Counted from the stretch's first letter, positions 1,108 through 56,854 are shown. The stretch is 64,000 nucleotides of DNA from Epithemia pelagica (GCA_946965045.2 OX337233.1:2728001-2792000); one strand, 5' to 3'. The notes: generated from the sequence alone by a model not told the origin. Made by a program: numbers and translations.

Positions 1108-2565
1108 TTAGTCTCCTCCACGTCTAGTGAACCTTCTTAGGAATCGTCGAAGCCCTCGTTTTCTCTCAGGGTGATCGTCGTCACTGTCACCGTCTTTGCC
1201 GTCTCCTGGCTTTTTGAACCCGCGTGTAATGGCAATGCGTGCCTCTTCCAGAGTGGCATCGGGTCCGAGTGGACTCTGCGTGTTCTTTCGTCTATCCTTG
1301 TAAAAGTTTGGATCCTTGGTTCGTTCCAAGTAATCATCTCCCTCTACTTCAGCTAGAATATCAATAGGAAGCTCTGAATCAAAATCACATGCAAGGACAG
1401 TGATTGAAATCTCTTCTTCCATGGCTGGATCAACCAAAGCACCAAAGATGATGTTGGCATTGTCATCCGCGTTCTCGTAAATAACCTCACTAGCTTCGTT
1501 GATTTCTTGAAGTCCCATATCTTCTCCACCGACAATGTTAAAGACAATGCGTTTTGCCCTTTGAATTGGGAAGTCCAATAATGGACTCGATATAGCCGCA
1601 ACAGCAGCATCCGATGCGCGATTCTTGCCAATTCCGGTACCAACACCCATGAGAGCTGTTCCAGCATCTTTCATGACAGCTCGAACATCGGCAAAATCTA
1701 CATTCACAAGACCTGCTTTCAGAATGATTTCTGAAATCCCAATGACACCCTGCCTCAAAATATCATCGGCCACAAGAAAGGCATCCGTCACGGGTGTATT
1801 GTCTGGAACGATCCGTAACAATTTATCGTTGGACACAACAATCAAAGTGTCCACATGTCTGCGCAATTCCTCAATAGCTGCTTCAGCCTGTCTCATTCGA
1901 TTCCTTCCTTCAAAGGCAAAGGGTTTGGTAACAACACCTACTGTCAAACACCCACAATCGTTCTTGGCAATTTCGGCCACTACCGGTGCCGCACCGGACC
2001 CTGTCCCACCCCCCATACCAGCCGTAATAAAAATCATATCGGCACCTTCACATATACGATGAACTTCTTTATCATTCTCCAAGGCTGCTTGTTGTCCGAT
2101 TTTGGGGTCTCCACCGGCACCCAACCCTCGTGTCAAGGCTCGGCCAATGTTCAAGACATTGGGTGCCAGGGACTTGGCCAAGGCTTGCGCATCTGTGTTG
2201 ATTGCCCAGAAACTAACACCTTCGATTTGACTCGCAATCATCCGATTGACAGCGTTGCCACCTCCACCACCTACACCGAGCACCTTGATAACACAAGGGG
2301 GACTGGGCGATGTTGCATCGTTGACATCAAAGGCATCTCCCATGTTTAGTGACGTCTGACTAAATCGCCAAGAAAACTTATCGTTGGGTTCTCTCCGTCT
2401 TGTAGTATACCAACATATTGGCTTTCTGGCAGCGCATTGAGATTGCTGTCGATATAGTTGACTTTGTTGCGTGCAGCAAAGCGGAAGTGGATTGAGATTG
2501 TAGCCCATAACATTGAGTAGATTGCATGTTATCGTCAAACCCAAAGCAAGGACCAGAAGCGACAT
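1108..2565 (-). CDS. ftsZ: Plastid division protein FtsZ (nucleus-encoded, bipartite targeting)
   Basis: Motifs [24 protein letters not shown], tubulin signature [12 protein letters not shown] and NVDFADV. Likely start is ATG 2565 ([10 protein letters not shown]... signal peptide); the ORF is open to 2754. Confidence 0.95.
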
Positions 2566-3513
2566 TGGTGATCGACTGTTGACTCGCAAATGAAGTTGGG
2601 TTGATGATCTTGATGGCCAATGGTTCCCTTCATCACCTGACATGGTGCTCGAAGTGTATTGATGACGTATCCACGTTGGATCCTTTGATGATAATATGAA
2701 GCGGGCTTTGGATATTGACCCTTCCTGCACTTTGTATGAGCTGGTTGGCATCACGGAGGCCCTATCTCTCCTCTGGATGCAAGGGTATCAACAACTCTCC
2801 ACTCGGATGACGTGCACGTTGTTGTGTTACGAACTAACACAAACAACAGAGCAATAGACCAAAGTTTTGATTGTCTACAGCTACCCTGCCATTGATATTG
2901 ATCGGCACACGCAGGGTGACATTTCAGGGGCGACGCACACGCCAAAGTCGACGAAAATGGTGCCGCGTTGAACAGAAGATTTTTGGAATTGCATTCTCGA
3001 TTAGGGTTAAAGTTCCCTCAGTTTCTTTTCTGGGATAGACTTTGGGTAGACCTATCCCCGAAAGAAATACTCCTACTCTTGGAATCGTTTGGATGAAGCA
3101 GCTGATACATCCAATGATCAACTTCGATCTAATCGAATGGTCTCCTCGGGGAAGAGCAGTGGTAAATAGTAGGAGGAATGGTCAGCACACCATTGTCGGA
3201 CTATGCGCCTCTAGCTAGAGTAGAGCTCAACGGGCTACCCCATGCTGTGAACATGATATTCCCTATCTCTCTTCTTGTCGATATAGTTGAACAAACCAAT
3301 TGAATGTAAATCATGTGGACGCGGGATTGTTTACTTGAAGATTCGAAGAATCGCGCGTCTTTCAAACAGGTGCTCGTGTTCCACGGCGGCAAAAAGTCGA
3401 GAACGCAATTGAAGATCTGCTTCCCACTTCCCACAAAGAGGAGCAAACGAACCGAACGACCAAGAGGTGAAGCTATCGAGAAAGGAGAACATTATCCTGA
3501 ACGACTTATCGCC

Positions 3514-12969: not shown

Positions 12970-13886
12970 GTCAATGTGCTACTCCGAAAAATGGAGTACA
13001 ATGATAAACTACAGAGAGGATACAATACGACCCAGCACCATCCCATATCCCATAATATCGGATATTCGTAATTCGTATTGAAAAAATAATAAAAGTTTGT
13101 TGGACACTACAGAAATGGGGAGAGTACAGCTCCTCTATTCCTCGGAGTACTACCTACGACTAGGTAGCTTGAGTCTCTAGCTAGAGAACTTGGTATAACA
13201 TTCTTCTCTCACGTCATACTCTTGCTAACTTGCAACTTGCAACTTGTATTCATTATTCATGCTTCGACCCTCCCTCCACGCTCCACGCTCTTCATTGAAG
13301 TTTCACCCGCGTGCCTATATGATTTCTTAATAGTATGGTGTTGACTGTAGACAAAGCGTGATTAGGCATCCATTGTCCTCATGTCAAAAGCGTGTGGTCT
13401 TATGGCCAAAGGCCGGTCTTATTAGACTGGGTATTGGTATTAGTTATTAGTGCTATTGGTGTATTCTTGCTTCATATTATTATGATCTTCATATTCGTCT
13501 AAGTTCAGTATGAACGTGATGGGTAGGCCGAAGGCTTTGGGGTCTGGGGTGGAACTTCCCAGAATGACCAGCTGTTCTGTCAGCGGATGCAGAATAGCAG
13601 AAGCAGTACAAATGAGAGAAAAGGAGCGTTGTTGAAACCGTTAAATATAAACAGCTACGAATAGTTTAATGGTGAGTCATGGTATGATTTTGGGGTGCAC
13701 CGTCAACCGCGTAATCTGTGAGTATGCTATTTCCCTAAGCATATCTTTGGTATTAATGTAATACTCCCAACCATCTGTTTATGACTGAAACAGGACTTTT
13801 ACATTGAATGCTTGTTTGGGGCGTTATATTTTCGGTATCGGGCCTGCGTTCTCTCCTGTCACGTTCAGAGTTGTGAAGTACCAAAT

Positions 13887-14226
13887 ATCGAGGTTTTAGA
13901 GGACTTTAGTCCTTTCAAGTACACTAAAGAATTGATTAGTAAGTACTTTTGTACTTAAAATTACTATAAGAATTCAATACACAGCGGAATAATGACTAAA
14001 AAGTACACTATACAATTTAGACTGAAATACTTTAGTAAGAAGAAGTACTCATCCCAACTATCAATCGGATCATTACTCCTTCCAAGGCATCTGCGGTAAT
14101 CAGTAAGTACTTCATTTAGGTACTTAAGTACCTCCACCCAACCGGTATGTACTTTCATTAGGGACTTAAGTACTTCATCACTTTCCAAGAGGTACTTTCG
14201 AAAGTACCCGTCAAATTACACATTCA
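13887..14226. repeat. Subterminal AAGTAC/GTACTT motif cluster of the large hAT (left end)
   Basis: Many AAGTAC/GTACTT copies in both orientations; typical of hAT transposase-binding subterminal repeats. Confidence 0.7.
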
Positions 14227-14228
14227 TA

Positions 14229-16202
14229 CTCCCTCCTGAAAGAAAATAGTGCACGAATTTAGAAAAAAAAACGATATCTCAACGAGCGAACGTCCTTTTT
14301 TCCTAAAATTTTTTTCCCTAGAAAGCTCTACTCATTAGCTCTATATTGGTGTATAACTTATATGTTCGATTCTTGCAAGGGGATGAGATATGACCGTTCA
14401 AAAGGCGCCATTTCGAGCTTTGCTTTTCAGTGCCCACCGGTTGAGACTTCTATGGCGCCTATGAACACGTCCTCTTCAGGGCGGCCCCCCAGGGCATCAA
14501 AGTTTAAGGCTCTGCGTGAAACAGACAAGATTCGTATTGTTTCGATGCTCAATTCCATGGTCAATCAAGGCACCTTTGGCCATGGTTCCATTGCTTTTGT
14601 TGCTCGAGAGATGGGTCTCGGCAGGTCGACCATAAGTAGGGTTTGGAGTGGCGCGCGCGTCACACGTGCCACAGGCATAATTCACTCGCCTGAATTTTCG
14701 AGGAAGTTGAGCGCGCGTGGTCGAAGGCCTAAGTTTTCACCTTCCACGATTAGATCGAGAGTAAAAGCCCTTCCGTTGATGGCACGGACCACAAGGCAAA
14801 ATCTCTCCCTCGCGTTGAAGGTTTTCACACCACGGTGAACTCGTGGGTGAAAAAAGGCATCCTTCGAAGCCACAGAAACATGTTGAAGCCTACGTTGACT
14901 GAACAAAACAAGTTGTCTCGCCTTCTCATGGCAACCTCCTTTATCAAAGAGAAAGAAGGCAAGGAAGGTGAGTATGAGTATGAGGATATGTATGATCTGG
15001 TTCATGTGGACGAGAAGTGGTTCTATCTTTCCCAGGATGGGCAAAGATTTGTGTTGACAGACGATGAAAAAAACCCACATCGCACTGTCAAGCACAAGAG
15101 TCATGTCACCAAGGTGATGTTTCTCTGTGCCGTTGCAAGGCCTCGCTTCATCCCCTATCTAAACAAGTGGTGGGATGGCAAGATTGGTGTCTGGCCCATT
15201 GGTGAGTGGGTTCCTGCAAAAAGAGATTCTGCAAATCGTCGCAAGGGAACTCCTGTGTGGAAAAACACAAGCATTACAAGAGATGTCTACAGAGCTCTAC
15301 TGGTTGAAAAGGTGTTGCCAGGCATTATAGAGAAATGGCCAGTCGAGGACAGGAAGGAAAGGGTGGTAAGGATCCAACAGGATGGTGCAAAATCTCACAT
15401 CTCTGACGACGACCCTGAGTTTCTTGAGTTCCTAAAAGATCTGAAGAATGAAGGTCAGTTGGATGCCAGTCTGTACACTCAGTCTCCCAATAGTCCAGAT
15501 ACCAATATCTGTGACTTGGGGTTCTTCAGGGCCATTCAGAGTGCAAGTTTGATTGTTGGATCGTGCGAAAAGGCTTTGATTGACTCTGTGACAAAGGCTT
15601 TTGCTGAGTATCCTAGAGAAAAACTGAACAGGACCTGGTTGACACTGCAATCCTGTTTCAACAGGATTATTGAAGAAGATGGTGGGAATGACTACCAGAT
15701 CCCCCACCTGAACAAGGAGGGTCTGGAGCGCAAAGGTCAGCTCCCTACTGTCTTGGATGTCACAAAGGCATTCGACCCAAACAACAATTTGCATGTAATG
15801 GAATAGGAACACTAATGCCTAATCCTACTAAATGAATACCTGGCCGACCTCCACTTGATTCAGGAGGCGGCCAGGGGCTACGGCCAATGATTGTCATCAT
15901 AGGACCCTTAATGGATTATTTGTTGTTATGGTTGTGTTGCTCTTGTTGTGTTTTCTCGTGTGGTTGGAAGGAGACGAATGAGTTTTTCTCGCGTTAGGAC
16001 ACGCCGGGTTGTAGGAACTGAAGCCATGGATCAACCCGGGGGGCACGTGTCACTGGTTTATGTTCATCTACGAAATCAGGGTGGAGTTCGACTCCGAATG
16101 AGCCAGCCGTCCTCCTGTAGGTTTGTACCAGAGCCTACGAGAGTTTTTAACGCGACTAAAATAACCAAAAAAAATCGTGCACTATTTTCTTTCAGGAGGG
16201 AG
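14229..16202 (+). mobile_element. Tc1/mariner element of plant-mariner (Stowaway-type TIR) lineage, nested in the hAT
   Basis: Perfect 28-bp TIR CTCCCTCCTGAAAGAAAATAGTGCACGA; TA TSD at 14227-14228 and 16203-16204. Confidence 0.92.
14362..15806 (+). pseudogene. Mariner transposase (DD43D) with one frameshift near 14820-14835
   Basis: N-terminal HTH-like region (VAREMGLGRSTISRVW) in the first ORF; catalytic motifs VHVDEKWF, IQQDGAKSH and SPNSPDTNICDLGFF in the second ORF. The two frames overlap at 14835-14838. Confidence 0.88.
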
Positions 16203-16403
16203 TAGGTAATTTAGCTCTCCTTTCCTTATGTACTTTAGCACTTAATTCACGTAGTCAGCAGTCTAAACTACACGATACTTAGTAACTCTCAGTAACACAT
16301 ACCACAGACCACAGAGCACAAAGTCTTGCTGCTGTATCCTCGATCCTCGCACATCTTCACCGCCTTTTGCACCTCTGACCTTTGATGTCTAATACCCAAA
16401 CAA

Positions 16404-18176
16404 ATGGATGACTATGTTGAACGCAATTGCATCCGTTTCGAATCGAAAGGCTTCCCAATTTACTGTCTACATTCCAATGAGGCCTTTTTTTCCTTCATGT
16501 ACGACTTCATGAGAACCACTCAACACGCTTCCATGACGTCGAATGCTCTACGATGTGCCGTCCAAAGCCAAACCATCGCATGGCTCCTTCGCAACAACCG
16601 ACATATCCAATTCCAAGAAAAGAATACATGGCAATCTCGTACACACACATGCCGGATTTCGGAGTTCATTTTCTTCGAACGAGTTCAGCTGATTGTTGGG
16701 ATTATTATACGGACCCTCAAGGATGGATATTCCCCTCACCAATCCATCGATTCCTACCAACACTTCTTTGTTCCAGACGAACCTTTCTTCTCCAATCGAC
16801 TGATTCTTTCAATTTCTTGTCGTCCAAACATTACCGTAGTGAAGAACCAACACTATTGGGACTGCCTTCAATTTACCTACGGAAAAAAACCAAGCACACC
16901 ACGCCCCCCTTCCAAGGCTCATTCGATTGTATCATCCTGGTTCTTCCGTACCGGTGTATCTATTGTCTGTAAACAAGTCCCGCAGGAAATGATCGTCGAT
17001 TACTACGTCGAAGATTCAAAGGACAAGTCTACCGATTCAGAATTCTGTTTCCCTCTGTCCCTGAACCTTTATGTTTCTAAATTGGTGGCATCATTTTTGA
17101 CCGAACGTATATCTCCCAAATCACAGGACAATTCACAACCATTGGACCACACAATCCCATACAACAATTATACGGATGACGATAACAGAACCAAACAAAC
17201 GAGTCGGAAATCACGTCAAAGAAAACAACAATATCCCAAAAAGTTGTCGGTTCAGTATTCCACACACTTGTATTCAACACGATACCGCAACGCAATCATT
17301 TCCAAATTCTTGCAATCTACTTTGCATTCTAAACAAGAAATTCAATATCCGGACAGACGACATCAACCGGGAGACCCTCCAAACCTAACAACACCCGCTC
17401 GATGCTCACTTCGTATTACTCTTGTGGAAGAAACCGTTCGACAACAACGCATTTCGGAATTGTCCCAAATGATGTCTTTTCATGCTGAGCTTAAAGAGAA
17501 AGGAATATTTGCTCCACGTGATAAGTGGACTGCTTGGCTCCAATTCACTGATGACCCTACTGCTGATCGGCCTTTCATGATATTAATCACAATCTGCATG
17601 AGCTCTAGCACGTCTGATTCCCAACTGAGCTCTATAATCCCACGCTTGTTTGCCTGTGGCCTCACTTTGGCAAATGCAGTAATCGACATTGCCCAACAAT
17701 TTGGCATGAATGCTTTTTGTAGCCTTCTTTTGGAATCAGGACTGTATTACAACAACACAGAGCGGATTGTCAACGCTGCAGATTATTTTTGTCAGTACCA
17801 TGGTGGTAAAATACCTGAAGACATAACAATCTATGAGCTTACAACACTACATGGAATTGGATATAAAACTGCATGCATCGTCATCGAAGAAGCATTTCAC
17901 CGAGTTGATGGCATACCTGCGGATATTCACGTGATCCGGTGGGCCGATCATCTCTCTTGGACTCCCAACGGCATTGTTGGTATTGCCTGTTCCAAAGTGT
18001 TGGAATCATGGTTGCCCCAAGACAAGTGGTACGCAATAAACCCCCTATTTGGTGCATTCGGTCAACATTGCAGTACCATAGACTCAAAATCAAAAATTGT
18101 AGCAGCATTGACAAAGACTGACCGAGTCAGCGACCCTGTCAGAAAGAAGTTAATGACAATGATTCACAAATATTAA
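16404..18176 (+). CDS. 590-aa protein: uncharacterised N-terminal region plus C-terminal Endonuclease III/Nth-like HhH-GPD DNA glycosylase domain
   Basis: PFMILITICMSSSTSD (cf. PFELLIAVLLSAQATD of EndoIII), HhH motif LTTLHGIGYKTA (Lys488) and GIPADIHVIRW (Asp507). No C-x6-C-x2-C-x5-C Fe-S motif follows. The ORF is uninterrupted. Confidence 0.85.
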   Translation: MDDYVERNCIRFESKGFPIYCLHSNEAFFSFMYDFMRTTQHASMTSNALRCAVQSQTIAWLLRNNRHIQFQEKNTWQSRTHTCRISEFIFFERVQLIVGIIIRTLKDGYSPHQSIDSYQHFFVPDEPFFSNRLILSISCRPNITVVKNQHYWDCLQFTYGKKPSTPRPPSKAHSIVSSWFFRTGVSIVCKQVPQEMIVDYYVEDSKDKSTDSEFCFPLSLNLYVSKLVASFLTERISPKSQDNSQPLDHTIPYNNYTDDDNRTKQTSRKSRQRKQQYPKKLSVQYSTHLYSTRYRNAIISKFLQSTLHSKQEIQYPDRRHQPGDPPNLTTPARCSLRITLVEETVRQQRISELSQMMSFHAELKEKGIFAPRDKWTAWLQFTDDPTADRPFMILITICMSSSTSDSQLSSIIPRLFACGLTLANAVIDIAQQFGMNAFCSLLLESGLYYNNTERIVNAADYFCQYHGGKIPEDITIYELTTLHGIGYKTACIVIEEAFHRVDGIPADIHVIRWADHLSWTPNGIVGIACSKVLESWLPQDKWYAINPLFGAFGQHCSTIDSKSKIVAALTKTDRVSDPVRKKLMTMIHKY

Positions 18177-18264
18177 TCGCTCTCCTAGTTTGTTACCTAA
18201 TTTCATCTTTGTCATCACTCATTTCTCTTCATTCATTCATTCTTTGCTTGCATACTACTCATCA

Positions 18265-21200
18265 CTATTCATCATTCTCCTCGTCGTTCTCATCGTTGTT
18301 CTCCTCGTCATTCTCGTTCTCCTTCCTCTCGTCTTCATCTTTGTAGTCGTCATCATCCTCATTCGCATCACTATCCACGAATGTATCGTCGTTGTCCATA
18401 CTATCCACTTGCTCACTAATCTCATCCTCGCCCTGGTCTTCTTCTTTGTCGTCCTTCTTTCCCATGATGCTCTTCTTCCTGCTTTGTGCCCTTGCCATAC
18501 CAGCCATAGTATCGCTAGTTTGTTGCTTCGATGCCGCATCCTTCTTATGCCGGGGAGAGACGCGTACTGGTTCCGTTGGTTTTTTCCGTTTTGGTGTATT
18601 TGGTTTTGGCTTCTTACCAATGGACAATTTAGATTTTTTCTTGCCACTACCACTGCTGGGATTGGGTGGGCACTTTCTCTTGCGCCTTTTACTCGAGCTC
18701 AACTTCTGATTGGTCTTTCTCTTTGTTGGTGGAGTGACAACAAGTACATCGTTGGCATCGTCATCTTCAGCAGGAGCATCACCTGGAGCCAGCATGTCTT
18801 CTTCAACCACTGTATCTTTCTCATTATTCTTCCTATCACTCTCATTCAGGTCCACCAATCCTGTTCCATCCTCGAAGTTTACCTCAAAGTCATCTTGGAC
18901 ATCGACTAGTCCATCATCATCGTCATTGTTGTCCATCCATTCATCATCTAGTAGACGGTTGATGATTTCATCACTGTCTTCGTCTGGTTCTTCTGGTGGC
19001 GGAACAGATGCATCAACCGAATCGTCATCGTAACGATCATCAATGGTGACATAGACAATTCGGTTTGCATTGGCTGGAGTTGTGTCTTCTCCGTGTGTCG
19101 TTAGGGTATAGGGACTGACTTTCTTGTTCGCCTTTCGTCCTTTGGCGCTATTGCCAACAGATCCTGAGCTATTGTCTTTGTTATTGGCAGTCGGGTCAAT
19201 CTTTGCCGGTGGTTTTGTGTCCATAGAGTCATTATCCAATGGCGCATCGGGTGGTGTTTTTGTACCACCTGCACTCTTTCTACCTTGCAGGCTGTCTTCA
19301 CTTGGTATTTTGGCACCTTCTACTGGATAGAACGACATTGTTACGGCGGGGTCCTTGATTACGTCTTTAGTAATGTCTCGAGTGTTGAAGTACCTCCGTA
19401 ACGAAGACGTGGAGTCCCTCATTCCTGACACAGCAAACTTGTTATCTTGCTCTTTCAAACTCTCTTCAATAGCCGCGCTAATTGCCATGTCATCAGGATC
19501 TATTTCTCGCTTATCGTATGATTTCGTGGTACCCTTTCCTGCCTTGATGTCCTTTTCGTTACTTTCGATTTCAGCCACTAGCTGTCGTGTTATACGCTCC
19601 ATTGTGCGCATTTCATTTGTCTTCCTGTCCAAATTCGACATTAGCTTGTTCTGCAGCATCCAACTGCCAATCGAGAAAATTCGTTCTTGGAACGCATTAG
19701 TTGCCGGTTTAGCCAACCACACGATAGCGGATGGAAACACGTAGGACCAGTTACTTGAGTGTTTACGCCACCATCCCATTAAGTCAAAGAACCGACCCAC
19801 TTCCAAATAGTTCCGACTGTGACAATGTCGGGCAAACATCTGCTTCTGAGCATCGTCCCATTTCGGCCATTCCTTGGTGTAAGCCTCTGTTGGATATTGT
19901 TTGATAATATCCGCCCAATTGAAGTCAATTTGTGACTCGCAATGGCGGAGAAAGTCGTCATAGCACTCTGTGCATGCCTTTTTGAGTGCTTGTTGTACAA
20001 CTTGCTCTTCGGCGGCCTTGGACGCTTTTCCAGTTATATTCAGTAGTGCCTGTTTTCTCAGGTCACTTGCTTGGCGCATTCTTTCAAACACATCCATAGA
20101 CTTGTATTTGAGAGTGGCTCTATTTGGCTCGACGACCAATTCCGACGAGGAGTCAGATGTTTTCTTGTTTTGAGACGTCATCGCAGCTCCAATAGCCGAG
20201 ACCCGATGGTTAGTGAAGCGGTCTATCATATCGTTGATAATGATAGTGCGACCTTCCTTCACGTTGTCTTGATCGTATACACCGAAATTTACAAACATGT
20301 CGGCATAAACATTTGCCAAAAGGGGATTGCATCCAACGGCTTTTAAAGCGTCCGGATCCCGATTGTACAGATAGTAGCGAAACTCTTGGATGATTCGTCT
20401 CACCAACAATCTGGGCCCAGGATAGAGATCTTTGTATGGAATGGCTCTACGTGCCTCATCCAAGTCGTCAATACTTTTTCTAGCGTCCCAATACTTTTGA
20501 GGTTTATTGGGTCGCAACAAACACCCAACACCACAGTCGGGACCTTCCATTCTCATTCTTTGAGCATGGTAGAAGGAAGTGTAAATTTCCAGAAGAGAGG
20601 CGGAGTTGGAACCAGGGTCATCGGTCTGCAATTTCATGGCGACCATCTTTATGTTGGTTAGGATGCCTTCGTATTGCGCGAGCTGCAACCATTCGTCCTC
20701 TGAGGGATACCGCTTCTTAAAATTGGGGTCGCTTAGAGTGGCTGTCTTACAATATTCATCCATGCAGGGCTTATCGCGAAACAAATTGTGAATTGACAGA
20801 ACAAGGCCCCCAACCCGGGTGTCATTTGGCAAGGGGATCAGGACAATTTTGCCACCAAATTTCTTGACTCCGTCCTTCAATCGTTCCCACCGGTGTGGTG
20901 CCTTGCTGGAGGTCAACCAGCTCGCAAATTTCTTGAAAATACTCCATAGATCACAAAAAGAGTCGTTGGAATCTATCAAAATGCGATTTTGGTAGCGTTG
21001 TACCAAGCCAGTAGCGTGTTTTAACACGAGCTCGGCCTTGTGCATATCGCACTTGCCAGTTTTGTCGGGATTGCCAATGATATACTTACCCGCCAAAACG
21101 GCAGATGAAGTATTATCGTTGACAGCGGCACATAGGTCAGCAGTGGAAAGACCGACACTCAGTAGAAGGGAGTCGGTCAAATTGGCCACGTCGGTGGCAG

Positions 21201-22362
21201 CATGCCCGTGACACTCTGCCAACCCAATTGGGATTTTATATACCACGCAATTTCTCGGGTCGGTAAACATGATGGTGACACCGAGAACGTCATGGTTCTT
21301 TGCTTGCCATATATCGTGACAGCAGGTCACGAATGGTACAGATTGCGCACACAGACGCTTGTATTCATCACGGCTCTTGCGTATAAGATGGCCGACCGTG
21401 ATAAAGAATTGTTTGTACGAGGAGATTCGTACTTTCGTAATCTGACGTCGGCTCATAATCTCAGCACGGCTATCCTTGAGTGCTGTCGCGTTTTTGATGG
21501 CGTATTGTATGAGTTTGCAAAATTGTGGTTTCTCAACTGTCACTGCGGGTAAGCAACAGTCGTTCACAAAACGGTATATCAAGGTCTGCAGCTGAGACTT
21601 GGCTTCAGATTTCGTTGTATTCTGGCGGAAAGTCGACAGCGTCGATTGTTTGTCAGAAGTTTTCTTGTTGTTCTTAATTTCTTCATCCAATCCTTTGTGG
21701 TGCTTCAGAACATGTTGGTCAACGTTCGAAGGTTTGTAATGACTGCATAAGATGATGCATTCATTCAATGGTTTTGAACCAGTGTTGAAACAGAGTGGAC
21801 AGATAACGGCTGTCTTGCAAATAAGAGAGTATCGTTCTTTTGCAACTATGGGTTTTCGTTTTTCCGTGGTGTTCATGAAGGAGTCTTCTCCAATCTTCAC
21901 TAAGTCCTCAAAAGCGACAACCAGCTTGTCGAAACCATCGCGAGCGCCAGGAAGGTCTTCGAGTGTTCCTTTCTCTTGTTGTTCAACCAAAAACAACTCG
22001 AATTTCAACCAGTCAACGTGAGTCACCCATTTCCAATATGGGGAGGTGTTTCTGCCGTAGCTTATTAAGGGCGTAAACTTGCCATCAATGAGTGGGATGA
22101 GATTCTTTTCTTCTTGGTGAAATTGTTCCGTAGTCTGGGCAACTTGAGCAAAGTCAGCATCGACTGCTTTCTTTTTCTTCTCCAAAGCCGATGGTTTCCT
22201 GACCAGTTGAGGAGACTTCTTCTTTGTTTTCGATCCAGGATTCTTCTTTTTCACCGTTTTCTTGGCAGTGGGTAGATGCTCTTCGTCAACTTGGTCCTTC
22301 TGTTCCACTATTTCGTCATGAGGACCAGGATCTGGGGCTGCTGCTTCGTCGTCGTCAGACAT
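18265..22362 (-). CDS. hAT-superfamily transposase (~1365 aa), intact
   Basis: BED-like elements (YWKWV...CPLCF...HVLKHH), D1 CHDIWQ, D2 AVNDNTS, CxxH motif CDMH, NDTR, WWRKH and catalytic E in PATNAFQERIFS. Long acidic/basic C-tail. No stops. Confidence 0.9.
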   Translation of the reverse strand: MSDDDEAAAPDPGPHDEIVEQKDQVDEEHLPTAKKTVKKKNPGSKTKKKSPQLVRKPSALEKKKKAVDADFAQVAQTTEQFHQEEKNLIPLIDGKFTPLISYGRNTSPYWKWVTHVDWLKFELFLVEQQEKGTLEDLPGARDGFDKLVVAFEDLVKIGEDSFMNTTEKRKPIVAKERYSLICKTAVICPLCFNTGSKPLNECIILCSHYKPSNVDQHVLKHHKGLDEEIKNNKKTSDKQSTLSTFRQNTTKSEAKSQLQTLIYRFVNDCCLPAVTVEKPQFCKLIQYAIKNATALKDSRAEIMSRRQITKVRISSYKQFFITVGHLIRKSRDEYKRLCAQSVPFVTCCHDIWQAKNHDVLGVTIMFTDPRNCVVYKIPIGLAECHGHAATDVANLTDSLLLSVGLSTADLCAAVNDNTSSAVLAGKYIIGNPDKTGKCDMHKAELVLKHATGLVQRYQNRILIDSNDSFCDLWSIFKKFASWLTSSKAPHRWERLKDGVKKFGGKIVLIPLPNDTRVGGLVLSIHNLFRDKPCMDEYCKTATLSDPNFKKRYPSEDEWLQLAQYEGILTNIKMVAMKLQTDDPGSNSASLLEIYTSFYHAQRMRMEGPDCGVGCLLRPNKPQKYWDARKSIDDLDEARRAIPYKDLYPGPRLLVRRIIQEFRYYLYNRDPDALKAVGCNPLLANVYADMFVNFGVYDQDNVKEGRTIIINDMIDRFTNHRVSAIGAAMTSQNKKTSDSSSELVVEPNRATLKYKSMDVFERMRQASDLRKQALLNITGKASKAAEEQVVQQALKKACTECYDDFLRHCESQIDFNWADIIKQYPTEAYTKEWPKWDDAQKQMFARHCHSRNYLEVGRFFDLMGWWRKHSSNWSYVFPSAIVWLAKPATNAFQERIFSIGSWMLQNKLMSNLDRKTNEMRTMERITRQLVAEIESNEKDIKAGKGTTKSYDKREIDPDDMAISAAIEESLKEQDNKFAVSGMRDSTSSLRRYFNTRDITKDVIKDPAVTMSFYPVEGAKIPSEDSLQGRKSAGGTKTPPDAPLDNDSMDTKPPAKIDPTANNKDNSSGSVGNSAKGRKANKKVSPYTLTTHGEDTTPANANRIVYVTIDDRYDDDSVDASVPPPEEPDEDSDEIINRLLDDEWMDNNDDDDGLVDVQDDFEVNFEDGTGLVDLNESDRKNNEKDTVVEEDMLAPGDAPAEDDDANDVLVVTPPTKRKTNQKLSSSKRRKRKCPPNPSSGSGKKKSKLSIGKKPKPNTPKRKKPTEPVRVSPRHKKDAASKQQTSDTMAGMARAQSRKKSIMGKKDDKEEDQGEDEISEQVDSMDNDDTFVDSDANEDDDDYKDEDERKENENDEENNDENDEENDE

Positions 22363-22569
22363 TGAGTTCTTAAGCAAGCTGGGATGGGAACAATGAAGAT
22401 TGGGAAGTGGACACTGTGGAAGATCAGTTGGAAACACATTCACGAGTGTGTTTTTGAGGTAGCACAAAGCAGAGGTGCAGATGATCGATGACCCTCAGGC
22501 CTCATATCTCATCTGTTATCTCATCGTTTGTATGTGATCATTTGGAATATTGGAGATGTCAATGAATGG

Positions 22570-22926
22570 TTGGGGAATGAGAAGTACCTATTGGGTGAGA
22601 TGAGGAGTGATTTTGTACTTATTGGGCGATAAGGAGATGTAATGTGGATGGACTTCGGTAATTAAAGTACGGGTCATGTGACTCTGGGAAGGGACTTGGA
22701 TACATGAAGTACCGTCGTGGATTGGGGGGGGAAGGACTTTGGGACATAAAAGTACATGGAAATTGGGGGGTAGGTGTAATTTGGTAATTTAAATGAGATA
22801 ATTGGAAAAGGGGGTGTGGGACTTTCGTACTTTGGGCTAATATCAATGATTGTGAAAGGTGTACTTGGACTTTGAAAAATTACCGTAAAGGAAAGTACAA
22901 AATGATATAATTTGGTGAAATTGGTA
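22570..22926. repeat. Subterminal AAGTAC/GTACTT motif cluster of the large hAT (right end)
   Basis: Repeated AAGTAC/GTACTT and TTGGTAATT motifs, mirroring the left end. Confidence 0.7.
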
Positions 22927-23047
22927 ATTTGGTACTTCACAACTCTGGTCACGTTCGTGGAGAGTGCTCTGTGCCATGCTTCCCATAACCATTCGTTGTC
23001 AGGTGGAAGCAGAACGAACATGGGGAGTGGGGAGTGGGGAGTTCATG

Positions 23048-23781
23048 TACCCCCCAGCGGGGGTGGCTTTGAGGGTGTAATTTCGTGTAGCCACCCCCTT
23101 CCCTAAGAGCAAATAATAACCTATTTCTTGACGGTAGGCATATCTCATTTCCTCCACCACGACAACAACACGGGCCATGGTGTTGCACAGGTTGTTGTGC
23201 ACCTATTTGGACTCTTGAAACCTGTCTTCCCAGTCATAGACCTCAAACCAATAGTGTAGAATGCATCTGCATCACCAAAGTTTAAAGGTTAAGGCTGTTA
23301 TGCATCAGACTCATAGGCGCCATGCCTCGTGGCACAGGCACGGACGCGACGTCACACAATTTCGAACGAAGCGGACAATATGGCTCTTATCTTGCATTGT
23401 TTGAACACCTATTGATCTACAATACTCATAACAGTAGTAGTTACGCGCTGCATTGATAGCAAAACATCAACTCTCATGTATTTTCATGCCATCATGGTCT
23501 CCTATTGTGCCTGTATTACGCGTCACTGTATTGGTCATTTCCTAGAGTGGCCCGAATCCACTGTGTCCCTCACAATGCACTGCCATGGTACCCAGATGAA
23601 GCATATGATGGTCGGATCATGATGGGGTGGCCATTGGAGGTCACCAGCAACAACAAAGTTTGATTGTCGCGTTGTTATCGTGGTGGAGGAAATGAGATAT
23701 GCCTACCGTCAAGATCCAGCGAACAGAGAAGGGGGTGTTTCAACGAAATTACTCCCTCAAAAACACCCCCGCTGGGGGCTA
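23048..23781. mobile_element. Mutator-like non-autonomous element (MITE, 734 bp)
   Basis: ~120-bp imperfect TIRs (TA[C/G]CCCCCAGCGGGGGTG...CTTGACGGTAGGCATATCTCATTTCCTCCACCACGA). 10-bp TSD GGAGTTCATG at 23038-23047 and 23782-23791. Confidence 0.8.
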
Positions 23782-27282: not shown

Positions 27283-27513
27283 AAATGGGCCCAAGGAGAA
27301 TACAAACAGACATAACGGTTGCGACAAAATTAGTAGTAATAACACTTTGGCTGACGAGCCTACGAGCCCCATGTCAGCGAGTAAGCAAAGTTGTCTACTT
27401 TCTACTTTCTACTTTCTACTTTGCGTCGACCAAATTATGCAAATCTTACTGCCACAAAATTTATATGCAGCTGCTTGGTAACACTCGGTGTTTCCATAGC
27501 AGGCCTAGCTAGC

Positions 27514-30500
27514 ATGTATGTTAGAGACTCTTCCATTGAGAAAGGGGTTGCTAAAGCAGCAGCATGCCGTGACTCCCTATTGTATAAAGACGGAGACAAG
27601 TTTTTTCCAAAAGTGTGTTGTGTTTGCGACCAGTTCATCAAGGTTGGACATGAGAAATGTTTGAAACTAGAAGATCTAAAGCACAGACGACTTCAACCCA
27701 AGTTTCTGAAGGCAAATCTGGATTTCACCCATTGCAGCATCTCAGAAGACAGCAAGAAAATAATCAAGGGGCATTACACACAAAGTTGTTATAATGCAAG
27801 AAACACTGCACGATATCGCTTTCTGCAGCAACTTGTTCTTTCCCCATCTTCATATGCATTGAAAAAGGGGCAGAAACGTGAAGGACTGGGATGTTGTAGC
27901 ACTTGTTACAATACTATTATTCAAATGAAGAAAGAATCATGTGATCCTGACAAGGTCCCCAAATATGCCATATTTAATGGATTGATGTTTGGTCCCACAC
28001 CTGCCTGTTTGCAAGATTTGAATGAAGTTGAGCTGGCTTTGATTTCACCTGCAAGAACAAACAAACATATCTTTTCGTTTGCCGCAGGGTCACATAAATC
28101 TATCAAGGGGTGGCATGCGTTGTACTACAATGACCTAAATGCAGTAAATGGAGTGATTAATTGGTGTCGTACAACAACAGGGCAGAATTCAACTAATGAT
28201 AATGACGCGCAAAATGGGCAGGAACTCCCTGTACACTGGGCTGAAACTGCATTGTTTGATGAAGAAAGTATTGGTGATGATAATGACAGCAATGAAGATA
28301 TCGAAAGTACTGCCAACAACTCCACTACAAATACATCTGAGGGGAACACCGGCAATGACGGCAAAGAAGAAACTGAGCATCATGACGATGAAGACATTCA
28401 AGAAGATCCACAGGATTCTCCATTACTACCACAAATTGCTGTCATTCTAACAGGACCATTCACACCCAGACAGAAAGCTCTGACATACCAGCGTACAAAG
28501 GTTCGTTGGAATAGGGTCCATATGGCATTGCAATGGCTGAAGGACAACAATCATTTATACAAAGACTTAGACTTGCCGGACGACAAAATCATTGAGCCAA
28601 TAATTATTGACAAAAGTGAGGACATTGATGAAACAGCTTCCTCATCAAATGTGGAACAAGTCTTTGAAATAACAGCTGTTTTCCCAGACTCCGATGAACC
28701 ACAGTTAATCAATGGCGGCTGTTCATCACAAAATGATTTCAAGCAGGTAACACTTGATTGTCTTTTGGCTGACCACGAGAATAAGGATGCAACTTTGATT
28801 TCGCATTCATCAAAAACATTATTGAAAGACTATCAGGGCAAAAATCTTCTTAAGGCTTTTCCGCTTCAGTTCCCATTTGGTATTGGTGCATACAACAGTC
28901 AAGGTCAACCACATTCTGGCATGAAATATTTTGAATATCTCATGAGACATTCAACTAAAAATTTCCATCGTGCCGATTTTGTGTGCATTATTCACAACAT
29001 GTTTGAGCGACAGAGAATGGTGTCAAACTCTTATTTGAGAACCAGTGAAGCACAGGCAGAATCATTTGCAACAATCACAGATAAGCAGATTGAGGAAGCT
29101 ATACAGCGACATCTTGATTCCGCACAAGGATCAGCTCCAAGTGACAATTTTTTGAAAAAGATGAAAGCAATTACTTCATCAATGGGACACACAGGTGCTG
29201 CTTCAAAGAAAGCACGGCAGAATATGTTGGCAATGATTGCAAAATTTGGCCTGCCAAGTGTCATGTTTACCATTACACCTGAGGATGCAGTGAATTTCAG
29301 AATACGTGTAATGGCAAACAAAAAAACTGGTGAAAGGAATCCTCCTGATCCAAACACAACACCGGTTCATGACCAACACGAATATATACTTGAGTGTGGT
29401 GGAATTCGGCAAGTTCATCCAGGGCTTTGTGCCATTGAGTTTGAAAATGTGATAGCAATTACTATTCAGCATCTACTTGGTTGGGATATGAACAAGAGGA
29501 AAAACATAAAAGATCTTGGAATTTTTGGTGATCTGTTAGCGTGGTGTTATGCAGTTGAGGAACAAGGTAGGAAAACACTTCATGCACATTTCCTGTTGTA
29601 TCTGATGAAATGGTCTGTGCTACTTCAAGGACTTGGAGATGAGGCAACAAGAGAACGGTTCTCGGAACAATTGGTTGAATATGCATCAAAAGTTATGAGC
29701 ACATACATGCATGGTGAAGCCATTCCTTCCTGTGTTCAACAAGATTGTACTTCATATGTTTTCGAATTCTGCTCAAAACAAATATGCTGTTCATCACTTC
29801 AGAGGTGATGAAGACCAGGAATATGCGTTCGAGGCCATAATGTCTGCATTTGTACTTCGCCTCCACGATGAACCAGCAAAAGTCACGACTGGACAAGAAC
29901 AAATGCCTGCATTCCGTAGAAGAAAAATGAATCACACAAGAGAGACTTTGCAGAAGGTTAATCAAGGATCCCAGGTCATATCCTTTCTTTCTGGAGCAGG
30001 TGGATCTGGGAAAAGCCATGTCATCAAAACACTTGTGAGATATGCCAAAAATCTCTGTTCTAACCTCAAGGTCAGGTATGACAAACGTACAATTGTTGTT
30101 ACAGTCCTTACTGGTGCAGCAGCTGTTGGAATCAATGGTGAAACGACACATATGGCTTGTGCATTAAACAGGGAAGTTACCAATGAACCAGAAGAATGGA
30201 AGAATGCTTATCTCTTGATTGTAGATGAAATTTCTTTTGCATCAAGAGATGTTGTTGATAAACTGGATTACAAATTGAGACGCATTTTGAAGCCAGATCA
30301 CAAATTTGGGGGGATTCCAATTGTCTTCGCTGGAGATTTTACGCAGCTCAAACCAGTGAAAGCTCAGCCCTTGTATTTATTCAAAGACTTTGAAAAATGG
30401 TATGAATGGGTCCATACTTTTCTTGAGCTAAAAACAAACCACAGGTTTCATTTGGATCCACCTTGGGGTAACTTACTTTCAATATTCCGGGATGAAGGGC

Positions 30501-56623: not shown

Positions 56624-56854
56624 CGTTGGAATCTTTGATGCCAAAAACTTCTCTCATTTCCGCCCCGACATTACGGGCGCCCCCACAATGCACCCCGAGA
56701 AAGACGACGTGTTTGGATGCTGTGTTGGATGCACAAATCCCACCCGGTCAACGACCAAAGACTCGAGGTTACTGAAGCAACGACGAAGACCCTAGGCTTA
56801 AGGCTCCTACTTCTCTCATTCGCAAGTGCATAGAGTATTGATTGTAAGCTTACC

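What the first reader, a model, noticed from the sequence alone, without database searches (positions are those of the whole stretch)
13866..22947. Complete hAT transposon that carries its own Endonuclease III-like DNA glycosylase gene
Seen: perfect 21-bp TIRs and an 8-bp TSD enclose two intact convergent ORFs whose stops are only 88 bp apart. One is a hAT transposase. The other is a 590-aa protein with an HhH-GPD domain retaining the catalytic Lys (HGIGYK) and Asp (PADIH) but lacking the Fe-S motif. Established: hAT elements normally encode only the transposase. The HhH-GPD superfamily includes Nth/EndoIII, MutY, MBD4 and the DEMETER/ROS1 5mC glycosylases. Some transposons carry epigenetic cargo (VANC in Arabidopsis VANDAL MULEs, TET/JBP in fungal KDZ elements). 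Inference: this may be a transposon-encoded base-excision system that removes 5mC or repairs its deamination products, or one that processes hAT hairpin/excision intermediates. I know of no description of such a hAT family, but I could not search for one.
Basis: partly seen in the sequence, partly recalled or inferred. Interest (0 to 1): 0.92.

Follow-up and report, generated by a model that had tools for sequence, protein, structure and literature searches.

The report
hAT transposon carrying a DNA glycosylase
This is one intact-looking copy of an old family of cut-and-paste (hAT) jumping genes in an Epithemia-like diatom that carries, beside its transposase, its own endonuclease III-derived DNA base-excision enzyme, a transposon cargo I could not find described and whose role (most likely countering DNA-methylation silencing) is untested.

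Summary
Window 13866-22947 is a hAT element with perfect 21-bp inverted ends and an 8-bp target duplication (GTCACGTT). It has a 590-aa ORF whose C-terminal ~250 aa are an NTHL1/endonuclease III fold with the catalytic Lys and Asp but no Fe-S cysteines. A convergent hAT transposase ORF ends 88 bp away.

Corrections:
- A 1.97-kb Tc1/mariner-like element is nested at 14229-16202, which is why this copy is 9.1 kb rather than ~7.1 kb.
- The transposase probably starts at the ATG at 22362 (1365 aa).
- Pfam's HhH-GPD match is below threshold. The homology rests on PDB sequence and fold matches.

The glycosylase is not an accidental capture. Five further elements in a conspecific ENA assembly have the same tail-to-tail gene pair inside hAT ends, and three of them have their own TSDs. 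The two genes co-diverge, and both are under purifying selection (dN/dS 0.18 and 0.12). The family forms one clade of at least 31 clusters (50% identity) derived from eukaryotic NTH1. The N-terminal 236 aa fold confidently into a domain with no recognisable relatives.

Function is untested. Anti-silencing by base excision is my leading guess. CpG decay in this copy shows it does not fully shield the element.

The scan already found this family at least 8 times elsewhere in this genome.

The parts
13858..13865 (.). Left copy of the 8-bp target-site duplication, GTCACGTT
   Evidence: Read directly. Identical to 22948-22955.
13866..13886 (+). Left terminal inverted repeat, 21 bp, starting CAGAG (hAT YARNG type)
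   Evidence: 100% complementary to 22927-22947. 0 matches expected by chance. The same 21 bp ends sister copy L008.
13866..14226 (.). Left subterminal region packed with AAGTAC/GTACTT hexamers, presumed transposase-binding repeats
   Evidence: 16 hexamers in 361 bp against 1.08 per kb in the whole window. The binding role is inferred by analogy with other hAT elements.
14227..16204 (+). Nested Tc1/mariner-like transposon (element 14229-16202) with its duplicated TA. Two ORFs (14362-14838 and 14835-15806) lie in different frames, so its transposase is probably frameshifted.
   Evidence: 34-nt inverted arms, 97% complementary. Sister copy L008 has the empty site ACATTCA-TA-GGTAATT. Protein-atlas features point to DDE_3/Tc1-like transposases at score 0.90, which is a lead only. 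No Pfam or PDB hit.
16404..17111 (+). Glycosylase gene, N-terminal family-specific domain (aa 1-236). Two similar beta-hairpin/helix/helix/strand units, each with an invariant Trp (W60, W179).
   Evidence: AF2 pLDDT 81 and pTM 0.71. W60 and W179 are invariant in 15-18 family members. No significant fold match.
17112..17420 (+). Glycosylase gene, disordered linker (aa 237-291) followed by a conserved basic motif (R293, Y315, RHxPGxPPKLK around aa 319-330)
   Evidence: pLDDT below 50 for aa 237-291. Conserved columns in alignment A2.
17421..18176 (+). Glycosylase gene, endonuclease III/NTHL1-like catalytic domain (aa ~340-590) and stop codon. Catalytic Lys488 is the codon at 17865-17867 and Asp507 the codon at 17922-17924. 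There are no Fe-S cysteines, and the helical C-terminal tail ends in an invariant Tyr.
   Evidence: PDB phmmer: NTHL1 E 4e-19, EndoIII E 4e-10. Foldseek: 7rds E 3e-8. K488 and D507 are invariant in 18 family sequences and in bacterial Nth.
18177..18264 (.). 88-bp spacer between the two convergent stop codons
   Evidence: Coordinates; sequence.
18265..22362 (-). hAT transposase CDS, 1365 aa from the ATG at 22362 (the ORF is open up to a TTG at 22467). It has a BED-like CCHH motif (C188, C191, H217, H222) and hAT motifs D350-x-W, N-D416-N-T-S-S, C438-x-x-H441 and Q-E893-R-I-F-S. A long charged tail follows after about aa 960.
   Evidence: Dimer_Tnp_hAT at 21.6-22.7 bits against a cut-off of 21.4. 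Profile hit to Hermes transposase, E 0.0015. Atlas score 0.96 with 187 shared features to hAT/ZBED clusters. The motif residues are invariant in alignment A4.
22363..22926 (.). Right subterminal region with AAGTAC/GTACTT hexamers
   Evidence: 9 hexamers in 585 bp.
22927..22947 (-). Right terminal inverted repeat
22948..22955 (.). Right copy of the target-site duplication, GTCACGTT

Best explanation
**What is shown**
- Window 13866-22947 is a structurally complete copy of a multi-copy hAT DNA transposon of a Rhopalodiaceae (Epithemia-like) diatom.
- The family has two genes that have been inherited together since before its sub-families split.
- One gene is a BED/DDE hAT transposase.
- The other, convergent to it, encodes a ~600-aa protein. 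A family-specific folded N-terminal domain is joined by a disordered basic linker to an endonuclease III/NTH1-derived HhH-GPD domain.
- That domain keeps the Schiff-base Lys and the catalytic Asp but has replaced the [4Fe-4S] loop with helices.

**What is inferred**
- The protein is an active bifunctional glycosylase/AP-lyase that the element uses on DNA for its own benefit.
- My preferred mechanism is counter-silencing. The enzyme would excise 5-methylcytosine (or an oxidised or deaminated derivative) from the element's own DNA, in the manner of DEMETER/ROS1. The N-terminal domain would supply targeting, perhaps to the AAGTAC subterminal repeats. Base-excision repair would then restore unmethylated C and keep the promoters and ends of the element usable.

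**This particular copy**
- It has both ORFs open.
- It carries a later mariner-like insertion 200 bp upstream of the glycosylase ATG.
- It shows excess CpG-to-TpG decay, so it is probably an older, methylated copy.

**Confidence**
- About 0.9 that the glycosylase is a conserved, selected part of the transposon.
- About 0.4 that its role is anti-silencing by base excision.
For: **Architecture recurs in independent insertions (ENA assembly ERZ21939226)**
- L008: the same 21-bp TIR, TSD CTCACCAA, 97.7% identical to the window copy.
- L007: TIR CAGGGTTGTGTAGTA, TSD CTTAAAAG.
- L003: TIR CAGGGTATTGAAGT, TSD CTTAGGAG.
- L001: 15-bp TIRs.
- L006 also has the gene pair.
- All have glycosylase (+) followed by transposase (-).

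**Co-divergence**
- Identities of the glycosylase domain and the transposase core rank the same way in all 10 pairs: 70.6/63.0, 68.3/58.8, about 62/55, about 49/38.

**Selection**
- Window against L008: dN/dS is 0.175 for the glycosylase domain, 0.116 for the transposase core and 0.74 for the glycosylase N-terminus.
- The comparison with a 98%-identical copy in public reads shows the same pattern: 4 non-synonymous and 7 synonymous changes in the domain, against 17 and 5 in the N-terminus.
- K488 and D507 are invariant in 18 members.

**A distinct clade**
- 33 representatives at 50% identity reach E < 1e-30, followed by a gap down to about 85 bits.
- 31 of 32 fall in one clade with SH-aLRT 99, among eukaryotic NTH1 sequences.

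**Copy number**
- The window's own sub-family has 16 protein variants in the assembly, 8 of them full-length 590 aa.
- At least 8 further copies were noted in this genome.

**Relevance of methylation**
- CpG sites make up 9% of bases but carry 37 of the 145 differences between the two copies, so the family is exposed to methylation-type decay.
- In the diatom Phaeodactylum, loss of DNMT5a removes methylation and de-represses young TEs (PMC9998398).

**Precedent**
- TET/JBP demethylation-pathway genes are carried by fungal DNA transposons, including hAT7 (PMC12730594).
Against: - No substrate, expression or methylation data exist. No RNA run was shown to hold the element.
- The domain is closest to NTH1/EndoIII, which excise oxidised pyrimidines, not to DME/ROS1. 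No ROS1 or DME structure appeared among the PDB matches.
- DME/ROS1 need an Fe-S cluster and extra domains that are absent here.
- The window copy has lost 27 CpGs against 10 in its sister, and its CpG o/e of 0.87 equals the window mean of 0.86. There is therefore no sign that the element is kept unmethylated or shielded from deamination.
- The N-terminal domain's proposed DNA-targeting role rests only on weak winged-helix-like matches (Z 5.2 or lower), which is within noise.
Confidence: 0.45

Rival explanations
1. Transposition-support role. The glycosylase/AP-lyase acts during or after cut-and-paste. It might clean damaged bases or AP sites at the element's ends or at the donor or target gap. 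Alternatively it might make nicks that channel repair of the excision site towards copying from the sister chromatid, which would raise copy number.
For: The gene has been strictly co-inherited with the transposase through deep divergence. It sits tail-to-tail 45-130 bp from the transposase in every element seen. The bifunctional Lys/Asp chemistry is retained, so strand nicking is possible. It is nearest to repair-type NTH1 rather than to demethylases.
Against: Thousands of hAT families transpose with the transposase alone (established knowledge). hAT chemistry (hairpin on flanking DNA, 3'-OH ends) needs no base excision. There is no similarity or shared domain between the glycosylase N-terminus and the transposase that would suggest a complex.
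Confidence: 0.2
2. Self-repair against mutational decay. The enzyme removes T (or oxidised or deaminated 5mC products) opposite G at methylated CpGs of the element, in the manner of MBD4 or Mig. This would slow the CpG erosion that otherwise kills silenced transposons.
For: The fold search also recovers the thermostable thymine-DNA glycosylase 1kea, E 2.6e-4. In my computation its coding parts have CpG o/e of 0.87-0.91, against 0.69 for the nested mariner-like element and 0.50 for the neighbouring Helitron-like region.
Against: CpG sites are still about 3.5 times more mutable than other sites between two copies. The window copy lost 27 CpGs, including two conserved Ser codons (TCG to TTG) inside the glycosylase domain itself. 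The glycosylase domain and both arms have CpG o/e of only 0.59-0.69. T:G glycosylases of this superfamily are usually monofunctional, whereas the Lys is invariant here.
Confidence: 0.12
3. Non-catalytic or AP-lyase-only DNA-binding factor. After losing the Fe-S loop, the domain would serve mainly as a DNA-binding or bending module, for example a regulator or end-binding accessory protein, rather than as a base-excision enzyme.
For: The Fe-S cluster loop, which contacts DNA in EndoIII, is missing in all members. The Pfam HhH-GPD score is below threshold, which indicates strong divergence. A large additional N-terminal domain is present.
Against: The catalytic Lys and Asp and the HhH Gly residues are invariant across members that are about 30% identical overall. 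A mere binder would not be expected to keep them. Cluster-less active HhH-GPD enzymes exist, for example clusterless MutYX 8uuc among the fold matches, and OGG1 and MBD4 from established knowledge.
Confidence: 0.1
4. Host-beneficial or defence cargo. The glycosylase attacks modified bases in foreign DNA (viruses, other transposons), as prokaryotic antiviral glycosylases do. The element persists partly because its cargo helps the host.
For: DNA glycosylases that excise modified phage bases act as defence genes in bacteria (PMC11078745, listed).
Against: The gene is found only inside mobile hAT copies, many of them decaying, not as a fixed single-copy host gene. No relatives were found on viral contigs. 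There is no evidence for hypermodified DNA in diatom viruses.
Confidence: 0.05
5. Incidental capture. A host NTH1 fragment was picked up by one element and is carried as a neutral passenger or pseudogene.
For: hAT and other DNA transposons do capture host gene fragments (established knowledge). The N-terminal 330 aa evolve almost neutrally between close copies, with dN/dS of 0.74-0.95.
Against: Complete ORFs of about 600 aa are kept in sub-families whose transposases are only 38-63% identical. dN/dS in the domain is 0.16-0.18. The family is a separate clade only about 26-35% identical to ordinary NTH1. The N-terminus has invariant residues and a confident fold.
Confidence: 0.03

Closest known systems
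Endonuclease III / NTH1 (E. coli Nth, human NTHL1): bifunctional HhH-GPD glycosylases for oxidised pyrimidines
   Same: Best sequence and fold matches (7rdt E 4e-19, 2abk E 4e-10, Foldseek 7rds E 3e-8). Same catalytic Lys in the G-x-G-x-K-T/M-A motif and the same Asp in D-x-H-V. The nearest non-family sequences are eukaryotic 'Endonuclease III homolog' proteins.
   Different: It has no [4Fe-4S] Cys motif and is only about 26-35% identical. It carries a 330-aa family-specific N-terminal extension. It is encoded inside a transposon in many copies rather than as a single host repair gene.
DEMETER/ROS1 5-methylcytosine DNA glycosylases of plants
   Same: They are HhH-GPD enzymes thought to derive from Nth-type ancestors, are bifunctional with Lys and Asp, and have the biological logic proposed here (removing a silencing mark by base excision).
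   Different: DME/ROS1 keep the Fe-S cluster, have a split glycosylase domain and an essential C-terminal domain, and are host genes. None of these features is present here, and no ROS1 or DME structure appeared among the matches. The resemblance is functional speculation only.
TET/JBP dioxygenase genes carried by fungal DNA transposons (Kyakuja/Dileera/Zisupton, hAT7, Harbinger, EnSpm, Helitron; PMC12730594)
   Same: Cut-and-paste transposons, including hAT, carry a second gene of the cytosine-demethylation pathway next to the transposase.
   Different: The enzyme class differs (oxidase against glycosylase) and so does the host group (fungi against diatom). TET genes hop between transposon superfamilies, whereas here the cargo co-diverges with a single hAT lineage.
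VANC anti-silencing proteins of Arabidopsis VANDAL (Mutator-like) elements (recalled from the literature, not checked here)
   Same: A transposon-encoded accessory protein that acts on the element's own copies to undo DNA methylation. A sequence-specific targeting domain is proposed.
   Different: VANC is not an enzyme of base excision and has no homology to this protein. The transposon superfamily is also different.
Canonical hAT elements (Ac, Hermes, Tol2)
   Same: 8-bp TSD, short TIR beginning CAG (YARNG), subterminal hexamer repeats, BED-like finger, D-D-E motifs and a C-terminal hAT dimerisation domain.
   Different: The transposase is about twice the usual length, with a roughly 400-aa charged tail. 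There is a second conserved gene, and the transposase ORF has no introns.
Cluster-less HhH-GPD glycosylases (MutYX 8uuc, OGG1, MBD4, AlkA/MagIII)
   Same: They show that the HhH-GPD fold can be catalytically active without the Fe-S cluster. Several appear among the fold matches.
   Different: They are different subfamilies with different substrates. They match more weakly than NTHL1/EndoIII.

Membership tests
hAT superfamily of DNA transposons | 8-bp target-site duplication | tested here: met
   GTCACGTT on both flanks. Relatives have CTCACCAA, CTTAAAAG and CTTAGGAG.
hAT superfamily of DNA transposons | Short TIRs beginning YARNG | tested here: met
   CAGAG... as a 21-bp perfect TIR. Relatives begin CAGGG. 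The YARNG consensus is recalled from the hAT literature.
hAT superfamily of DNA transposons | Transposase with the C-terminal hAT dimerisation domain | tested here: met
   PF05699 at 21.6-22.7 bits against a cut-off of 21.4. Profile match to Hermes at E 0.0015. Atlas score 0.96. The margin over the Pfam cut-off is small.
hAT superfamily of DNA transposons | DDE catalytic triad with the CxxH motif, and a BED-type zinc finger | tested here: inconclusive
   D350-x-W, N-D416-N-T-S-S, C438-x-x-H441, Q-E893-R-I-F-S and C188/C191/H217/H222 are invariant in three transposases that are 33-49% identical. Assigning them to the hAT blocks rests on my recollection of those motifs. There is no residue-level alignment to Hermes apart from the C-terminal block.
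Endonuclease III / NTH1 family (HhH-GPD with Fe-S cluster) | HhH-GPD fold | tested here: met
   phmmer against PDB: NTHL1 E 4e-19. AF2 model pLDDT above 90 over the domain, and Foldseek 7rds/7rdt/1orn at E 3e-8 to 2e-6. Pfam HhH-GPD alone is sub-threshold.
Endonuclease III / NTH1 family (HhH-GPD with Fe-S cluster) | Catalytic Lys (Schiff base) and Asp | tested here: met
   K488 and D507 align to the Lys and Asp of NTHL1 and bacterial Nth and are invariant in the family.
Endonuclease III / NTH1 family (HhH-GPD with Fe-S cluster) | C-terminal Cys-X6-Cys-X2-Cys-X5-Cys [4Fe-4S] cluster loop | tested here: not met
   Absent in the window protein and in all 17 aligned relatives, while present in the bacterial Nth control. 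The tail is helical with pLDDT above 90 and ends in an invariant Tyr, so it is not a truncation. The protein is therefore derived from NTH1 but is not a canonical member.
DEMETER/ROS1 5mC glycosylases | Fe-S cluster, a split glycosylase domain with an insertion, and a conserved C-terminal domain | tested here: not met
   No Fe-S cysteines, a contiguous domain, and nothing after the glycosylase domain. The list of DME features is from established knowledge.
DEMETER/ROS1 5mC glycosylases | Excision of 5-methylcytosine | not testable with these tools
   Needs enzyme assays.
Transposons with epigenetic or anti-silencing cargo (VANC, TET/JBP type) | Accessory gene lying inside the TIRs, conserved and co-inherited with the transposase | tested here: met
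Transposons with epigenetic or anti-silencing cargo (VANC, TET/JBP type) | Cargo lowers methylation or silencing of the element | not testable with these tools
   No methylome or expression data are available. CpG decay in this copy shows only that the family is exposed to methylation-type mutation.

The most novel reading that the evidence does not exclude
The family encodes a transposon-borne 5-methylcytosine (or oxidised-5mC) DNA glycosylase that evolved from NTH1 independently of plant DEMETER/ROS1 and works without an Fe-S cluster. It would be targeted to the element's own subterminal repeats by a new type of DNA-binding domain. That would make it the first active DNA demethylase known in stramenopiles and the first glycosylase-based anti-silencing weapon of a transposon.
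Probability: 0.3. Interest if true: 0.92.

Novelty: new variant of a known kind. Interest (0 to 1): 0.78.

Why it matters
Transposons that carry genes to fight epigenetic silencing are known from only a few cases (VANC in Arabidopsis, TET/JBP in fungi). A DNA glycosylase kept by a hAT lineage through deep divergence would add a third, mechanistically different case.

It would also do so in diatoms, where TE control depends on cytosine methylation and, to my knowledge, no active demethylase has been reported. I did not verify that absence in the literature.

The case is directly testable: a ~600-aa intronless ORF, clear catalytic residues to mutate, and many natural copies with intact or broken genes to compare in methylomes.

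Two further points may interest DNA-repair biochemists, and possibly tool builders. The Fe-S-less EndoIII scaffold is unusual, and the N-terminal domain has a confident predicted fold with no recognisable relatives.

If the function turns out to be plain repair, it would still be the first example I can find of a eukaryotic cut-and-paste transposon carrying its own base-excision enzyme.

Tried and rejected
1. Pfam on the whole 590-aa ORF gave nothing, and on the domain alone only a sub-threshold HhH-GPD hit. I did not use it as support.
2. An exact look-up of the window's 1400-aa ORF in public assemblies found no record.
3. Read laying: the three runs are DNA contig sets of 'organism A'. They gave a 98% copy useful for counting substitutions but no RNA evidence, no introns and no copy number. 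One 1050-bp 'joint' in X3 has a 28-nt side and low depth, and I ignored it.
4. The metagenome scan with alignment A1 was swamped by bacterial Nth genes, because I had left a bacterial sequence in the alignment.
5. The viral-contig scan returned no relatives.
6. I tested whether the glycosylase N-terminus shares a DNA-binding domain with the transposase. hhalign gave probability 0.14, so I rejected the idea.
7. Fold searches of the N-terminal domain in PDB (Foldseek and VIA-align wide), AFDB clusters and the ESM Atlas found nothing above noise. The best was Z 5.2 over 58 residues. The winged-helix-like flavour of the weak hits is a lead only.
8. PDB searches with the transposase alone and with the mariner-like ORF found nothing significant.
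9. I considered whether the missing Fe-S motif could lie in a downstream exon. I rejected this because the C-terminal tail is conserved to an invariant last Tyr and is confidently helical, and only 88 bp remain before the transposase stop.
10. I considered whether the other loci could be the same locus re-assembled. I rejected this because their TSDs and flanks differ.

Full report
**1. The observation**

- The 21-bp inverted ends at 13866-13886 and 22927-22947 are perfectly complementary. They are the only two matches in the window even with three mismatches allowed, against none expected from shuffles.
- They are flanked by the direct 8-bp repeat GTCACGTT.
- Inside lie ORF 16404-18176 (+, 590 aa) and ORF 18265-22467 (-, 1400 aa from a TTG). 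The first ATG is at 22362 and gives 1365 aa. The two stop codons are 88 bp apart.
- Both arms are packed with AAGTAC/GTACTT hexamers: 16 in the left 361 bp and 9 in the right 585 bp, against 1.08 per kb in the window. This pattern is typical of hAT subterminal binding sites.

**2.

- A second pair of inverted repeats (34 nt, 97% complementary) at 14227-14260 and 16171-16204 bounds a 1.97-kb insert. It has two ORFs in different frames.
- A 97.7%-identical sister copy of the hAT (L008) reads ACATTCA-TA-GGTAATT across this point. The window has TA, the insert, then TA.
- This is therefore a later insertion with a TA duplication. Its protein looks like Tc1/mariner-type DDE_3 transposases by language-model features (score 0.90, a lead only). 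It has no Pfam or PDB hit.
- The insert explains the size: 9082 bp minus 1976 bp (the 1974-bp insert plus its duplicated TA) is about 7.1 kb, the length of the other copies the scan has noted in this genome.
- The insert sits 200 bp upstream of the glycosylase ATG.

**3. The transposase is hAT**

- Pfam Dimer_Tnp_hAT is just above its cut-off.
- A three-sequence profile hits Hermes transposase at E 0.0015.
- Atlas features score 0.96 against hAT/ZBED clusters.
- The residues I recognise as hAT blocks are invariant among transposases that are 33-49% identical: a CCHH finger, D-x-W, N-D-N-T-S-S, C-x-x-H and Q-E-R-I-F-S.
- Together with the 8-bp TSD and the CAGAG ends, membership is secure. The residue-level DDE assignment is motif-based.

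**4. The second gene**

- Residues from about 340 to 590 match human NTHL1 (E 4e-19) and bacterial endonuclease III (E 4e-10 to 4e-7).
- The AlphaFold model has pLDDT above 90 there and finds NTHL1/EndoIII structures first (E 3e-8).
- K488 (GIGYKTA) and D507 (ADIHV) align with the catalytic Lys and Asp. They are invariant in 18 family members and in a bacterial Nth control.
- The four Fe-S cysteines present in the control are absent from every family member. They are replaced by two confident helices ending in an invariant Tyr. The loss is therefore old and real, not a truncation.
- Pfam's own HhH-GPD model scores only 15.9 bits.
- The N-terminal 236 residues are not junk. The model is confident (pLDDT 81, pTM 0.71). 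It shows two similar beta-hairpin/helix/helix/strand units, each with an invariant Trp.
- A disordered linker (aa 237-291) and a conserved basic motif follow.
- No fold library gave a significant match for the N-terminal domain, and it is unrelated to the transposase.

**5. Is the glycosylase true cargo?**

Yes.

- A HMMER scan of 1.8 billion representatives finds 33 clusters at E < 1e-30. Most are 430-715 aa long with the domain at the C-terminus. There is then a gap down to ordinary NTH1 at about 85 bits.
- In a tree, 31 of 32 family rows form one clade (SH-aLRT 99) among eukaryotic endonuclease III homologues from Citrus, Palpitomonas, Aplanochytrium and Vitrella.
- I fetched five family loci with enough flank to see the neighbouring gene (L001, L003, L006, L007, L008). 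In all five the gene is followed tail-to-tail by a hAT transposase.
  - Three of these are complete elements with their own TSDs: L003 CTTAGGAG, L007 CTTAAAAG and L008 CTCACCAA.
  - L001 has perfect 15-bp TIRs.
- A sixth long locus, L002, holds only decayed glycosylase copies and one hAT end, with no transposase. The two short metagenome contigs, L004 and L005, show no recognisable transposase.
- Identity in the glycosylase domain and in the transposase core ranks all ten locus pairs the same way, from 70.6/63.0% down to about 48/37%. The two genes have therefore diverged together.
- The glycosylase domain is the more conserved of the two.

**6. Selection and copy history**

- Against L008, dN/dS is 0.175 in the glycosylase domain, 0.74 in its N-terminus, 0.116 in the transposase core and 0.38 in the transposase tail.
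- A comparison with a 98% copy present in three public DNA read sets gives the same picture: 4 non-synonymous and 7 synonymous changes in the domain, against 17 and 5 in the N-terminus. That copy may be close to L008, so this is not necessarily independent.
- Amino-acid differences among near-identical paralogues of other sub-families also concentrate in the N-terminus.
- The window's own sub-family has 16 protein variants in the ENA assembly, eight of them full-length. This points to recent activity.
- The window copy has both ORFs open, whereas L008 has a 1-bp frameshift in the transposase, a piggyBac-like insertion and a partial duplication.
- The window copy is nevertheless not pristine. 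Of the 145 differences from L008, 37 are CpG-to-TpG/CpA changes, although CpG makes up only 9% of bases. In 27 of them the window copy carries the decayed state, against 10 for L008.
- Two of these changes turned conserved Ser codons in the glycosylase domain into Leu (checked against A2).

**7. Organism**

- A host FtsZ gene at 1108-2754 is 100% identical to a protein in the ENA collection and 91% identical to Epithemia clementina. Amphora and Seminavis follow at about 80%.
- Most family loci come from ENA assembly ERZ21939226, which holds a 97.7%-identical copy of this element. The FtsZ result does not name the sample that carries the identical protein.
- The window therefore comes from a raphid pennate diatom of the Epithemia/Rhopalodia group, and that assembly is probably conspecific.
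- More distant family members occur on short JGI, Logan and sediment-metagenome contigs. The family is thus wider than this species, but I could not name other hosts.

**8. Mechanism**

What is shown:
- A conserved, selected protein with the chemistry of a bifunctional glycosylase/AP-lyase, encoded by the transposon.

What is inferred:
- What it does. I favour counter-silencing by excision of 5mC or a derivative (about 0.4).
- The family is visibly exposed to methylation-type mutation.
- Diatom TE repression depends on DNMT5-type methylation (PMC9998398).
- The only known comparable cargos, VANC and the TET/JBP genes of fungal DNA transposons including hAT7 (PMC12730594), serve that purpose.
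- The unexplained N-terminal domain could provide targeting.

Against this reading:
- The enzyme is nearest to oxidised-pyrimidine glycosylases.
- It lacks every DME/ROS1-specific feature.
- This copy shows no protection from CpG loss, and its CpG o/e (0.87) merely equals the window mean.

The rivals are a repair or nicking role in transposition, T:G-type self-repair, a non-catalytic DNA binder, host-beneficial defence, and a neutral passenger. They are listed with odds in the rival explanations.

**9. Novelty**

- Full-text searches for hAT, transposase and transposon together with HhH-GPD, endonuclease III or glycosylase found no description of such an element.
- The closest published concept is the TET/JBP cargo.
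- Within this scan the family has already been reported at least eight times on other pieces of this genome, with the same conclusion.
- This report adds:
  - the nested mariner-like element and its empty site;
  - domain-resolved dN/dS for both genes;
  - the co-divergence table;
  - the asymmetric CpG decay;
  - the confident but unmatched N-terminal fold;
  - the host identification.

Noticed in passing
window 14227-16204: A Tc1/mariner-like transposon (34-nt inverted arms, TA duplication, two ORFs in different frames that overlap at 14835-14838) is nested in the hAT left arm, 200 bp upstream of the glycosylase start. Its CpG o/e is 0.69.
   Followed up: yes
L008 5523-9761 (ENA ERZ21939226 ctg1270l): The sister hAT copy is interrupted about 45 bp from the same left-arm position by about 2.6 kb carrying a piggyBac-like transposase (PF13843). 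It also has a partial duplication of the first ~1.1 kb that follows the left arm. This stretch between the subterminal repeats and the glycosylase gene seems to tolerate or attract insertions.
   Followed up: partly
window 23048-23781: About 100 bp beyond the hAT's right end lie two nested long inverted-repeat pairs: 57 nt at 84% complementarity and 47 nt at 96%, with arms about 500-620 nt apart. They look like a foldback or MITE-like element.
   Followed up: no
window 27391-29808: An 805-aa ORF has Helitron_like_N and DUF6570 domains. The surrounding 28-32 kb stretch has the lowest CpG o/e in the window (0.50) and a TpG/CpA excess (1.45), consistent with an old methylated Helitron.
   Followed up: partly
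window 1108-2754 (-): A nuclear FtsZ gene (Tubulin and FtsZ_C domains) is 91% identical to Epithemia clementina and 100% identical to a protein in the ENA collection. This places the window in a Rhopalodiaceae diatom.
   Followed up: yes
window 60779-63448 (-): An 889-aa ORF has a C-terminal DRMBL (SNM1/Artemis-type DNA-repair metallo-beta-lactamase) domain. The other host genes nearby are ordinary: transketolase at 59105-60547, cytochrome P450 at 55037-56644, a cNMP-binding/EF-hand protein at 46681-48117 and a protein kinase at 44335-46566.
   Followed up: no
window 16203-22947 against L008 9807-16542: Substitutions between the two copies are strand-asymmetric in the read-based comparison: T in the window against C in the other copy 26-29 times, the reverse 11 times, while A/G changes are balanced at about 13 against 15. 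Six of the changes in the glycosylase ORF are TCG (Ser) to TTG (Leu).
   Followed up: partly
L001 7161-8498: A ~1.3-kb element with 25-bp TIRs (GGGACACCCGG...) abuts, and overlaps by 1 nt, the left end of the hAT copy in L001. It obscures that copy's TSD. A further partial end of the same element lies just upstream.
   Followed up: no
proteins P0047/P0182 and P0058 (JGI metagenomes): The nearest sequences outside the family include other long 'endonuclease III' proteins (477, 796 and even 1806 aa) with the domain at the C-terminus. They may be further lineages of extended, possibly mobile-element-borne NTH-like proteins.
   Followed up: no
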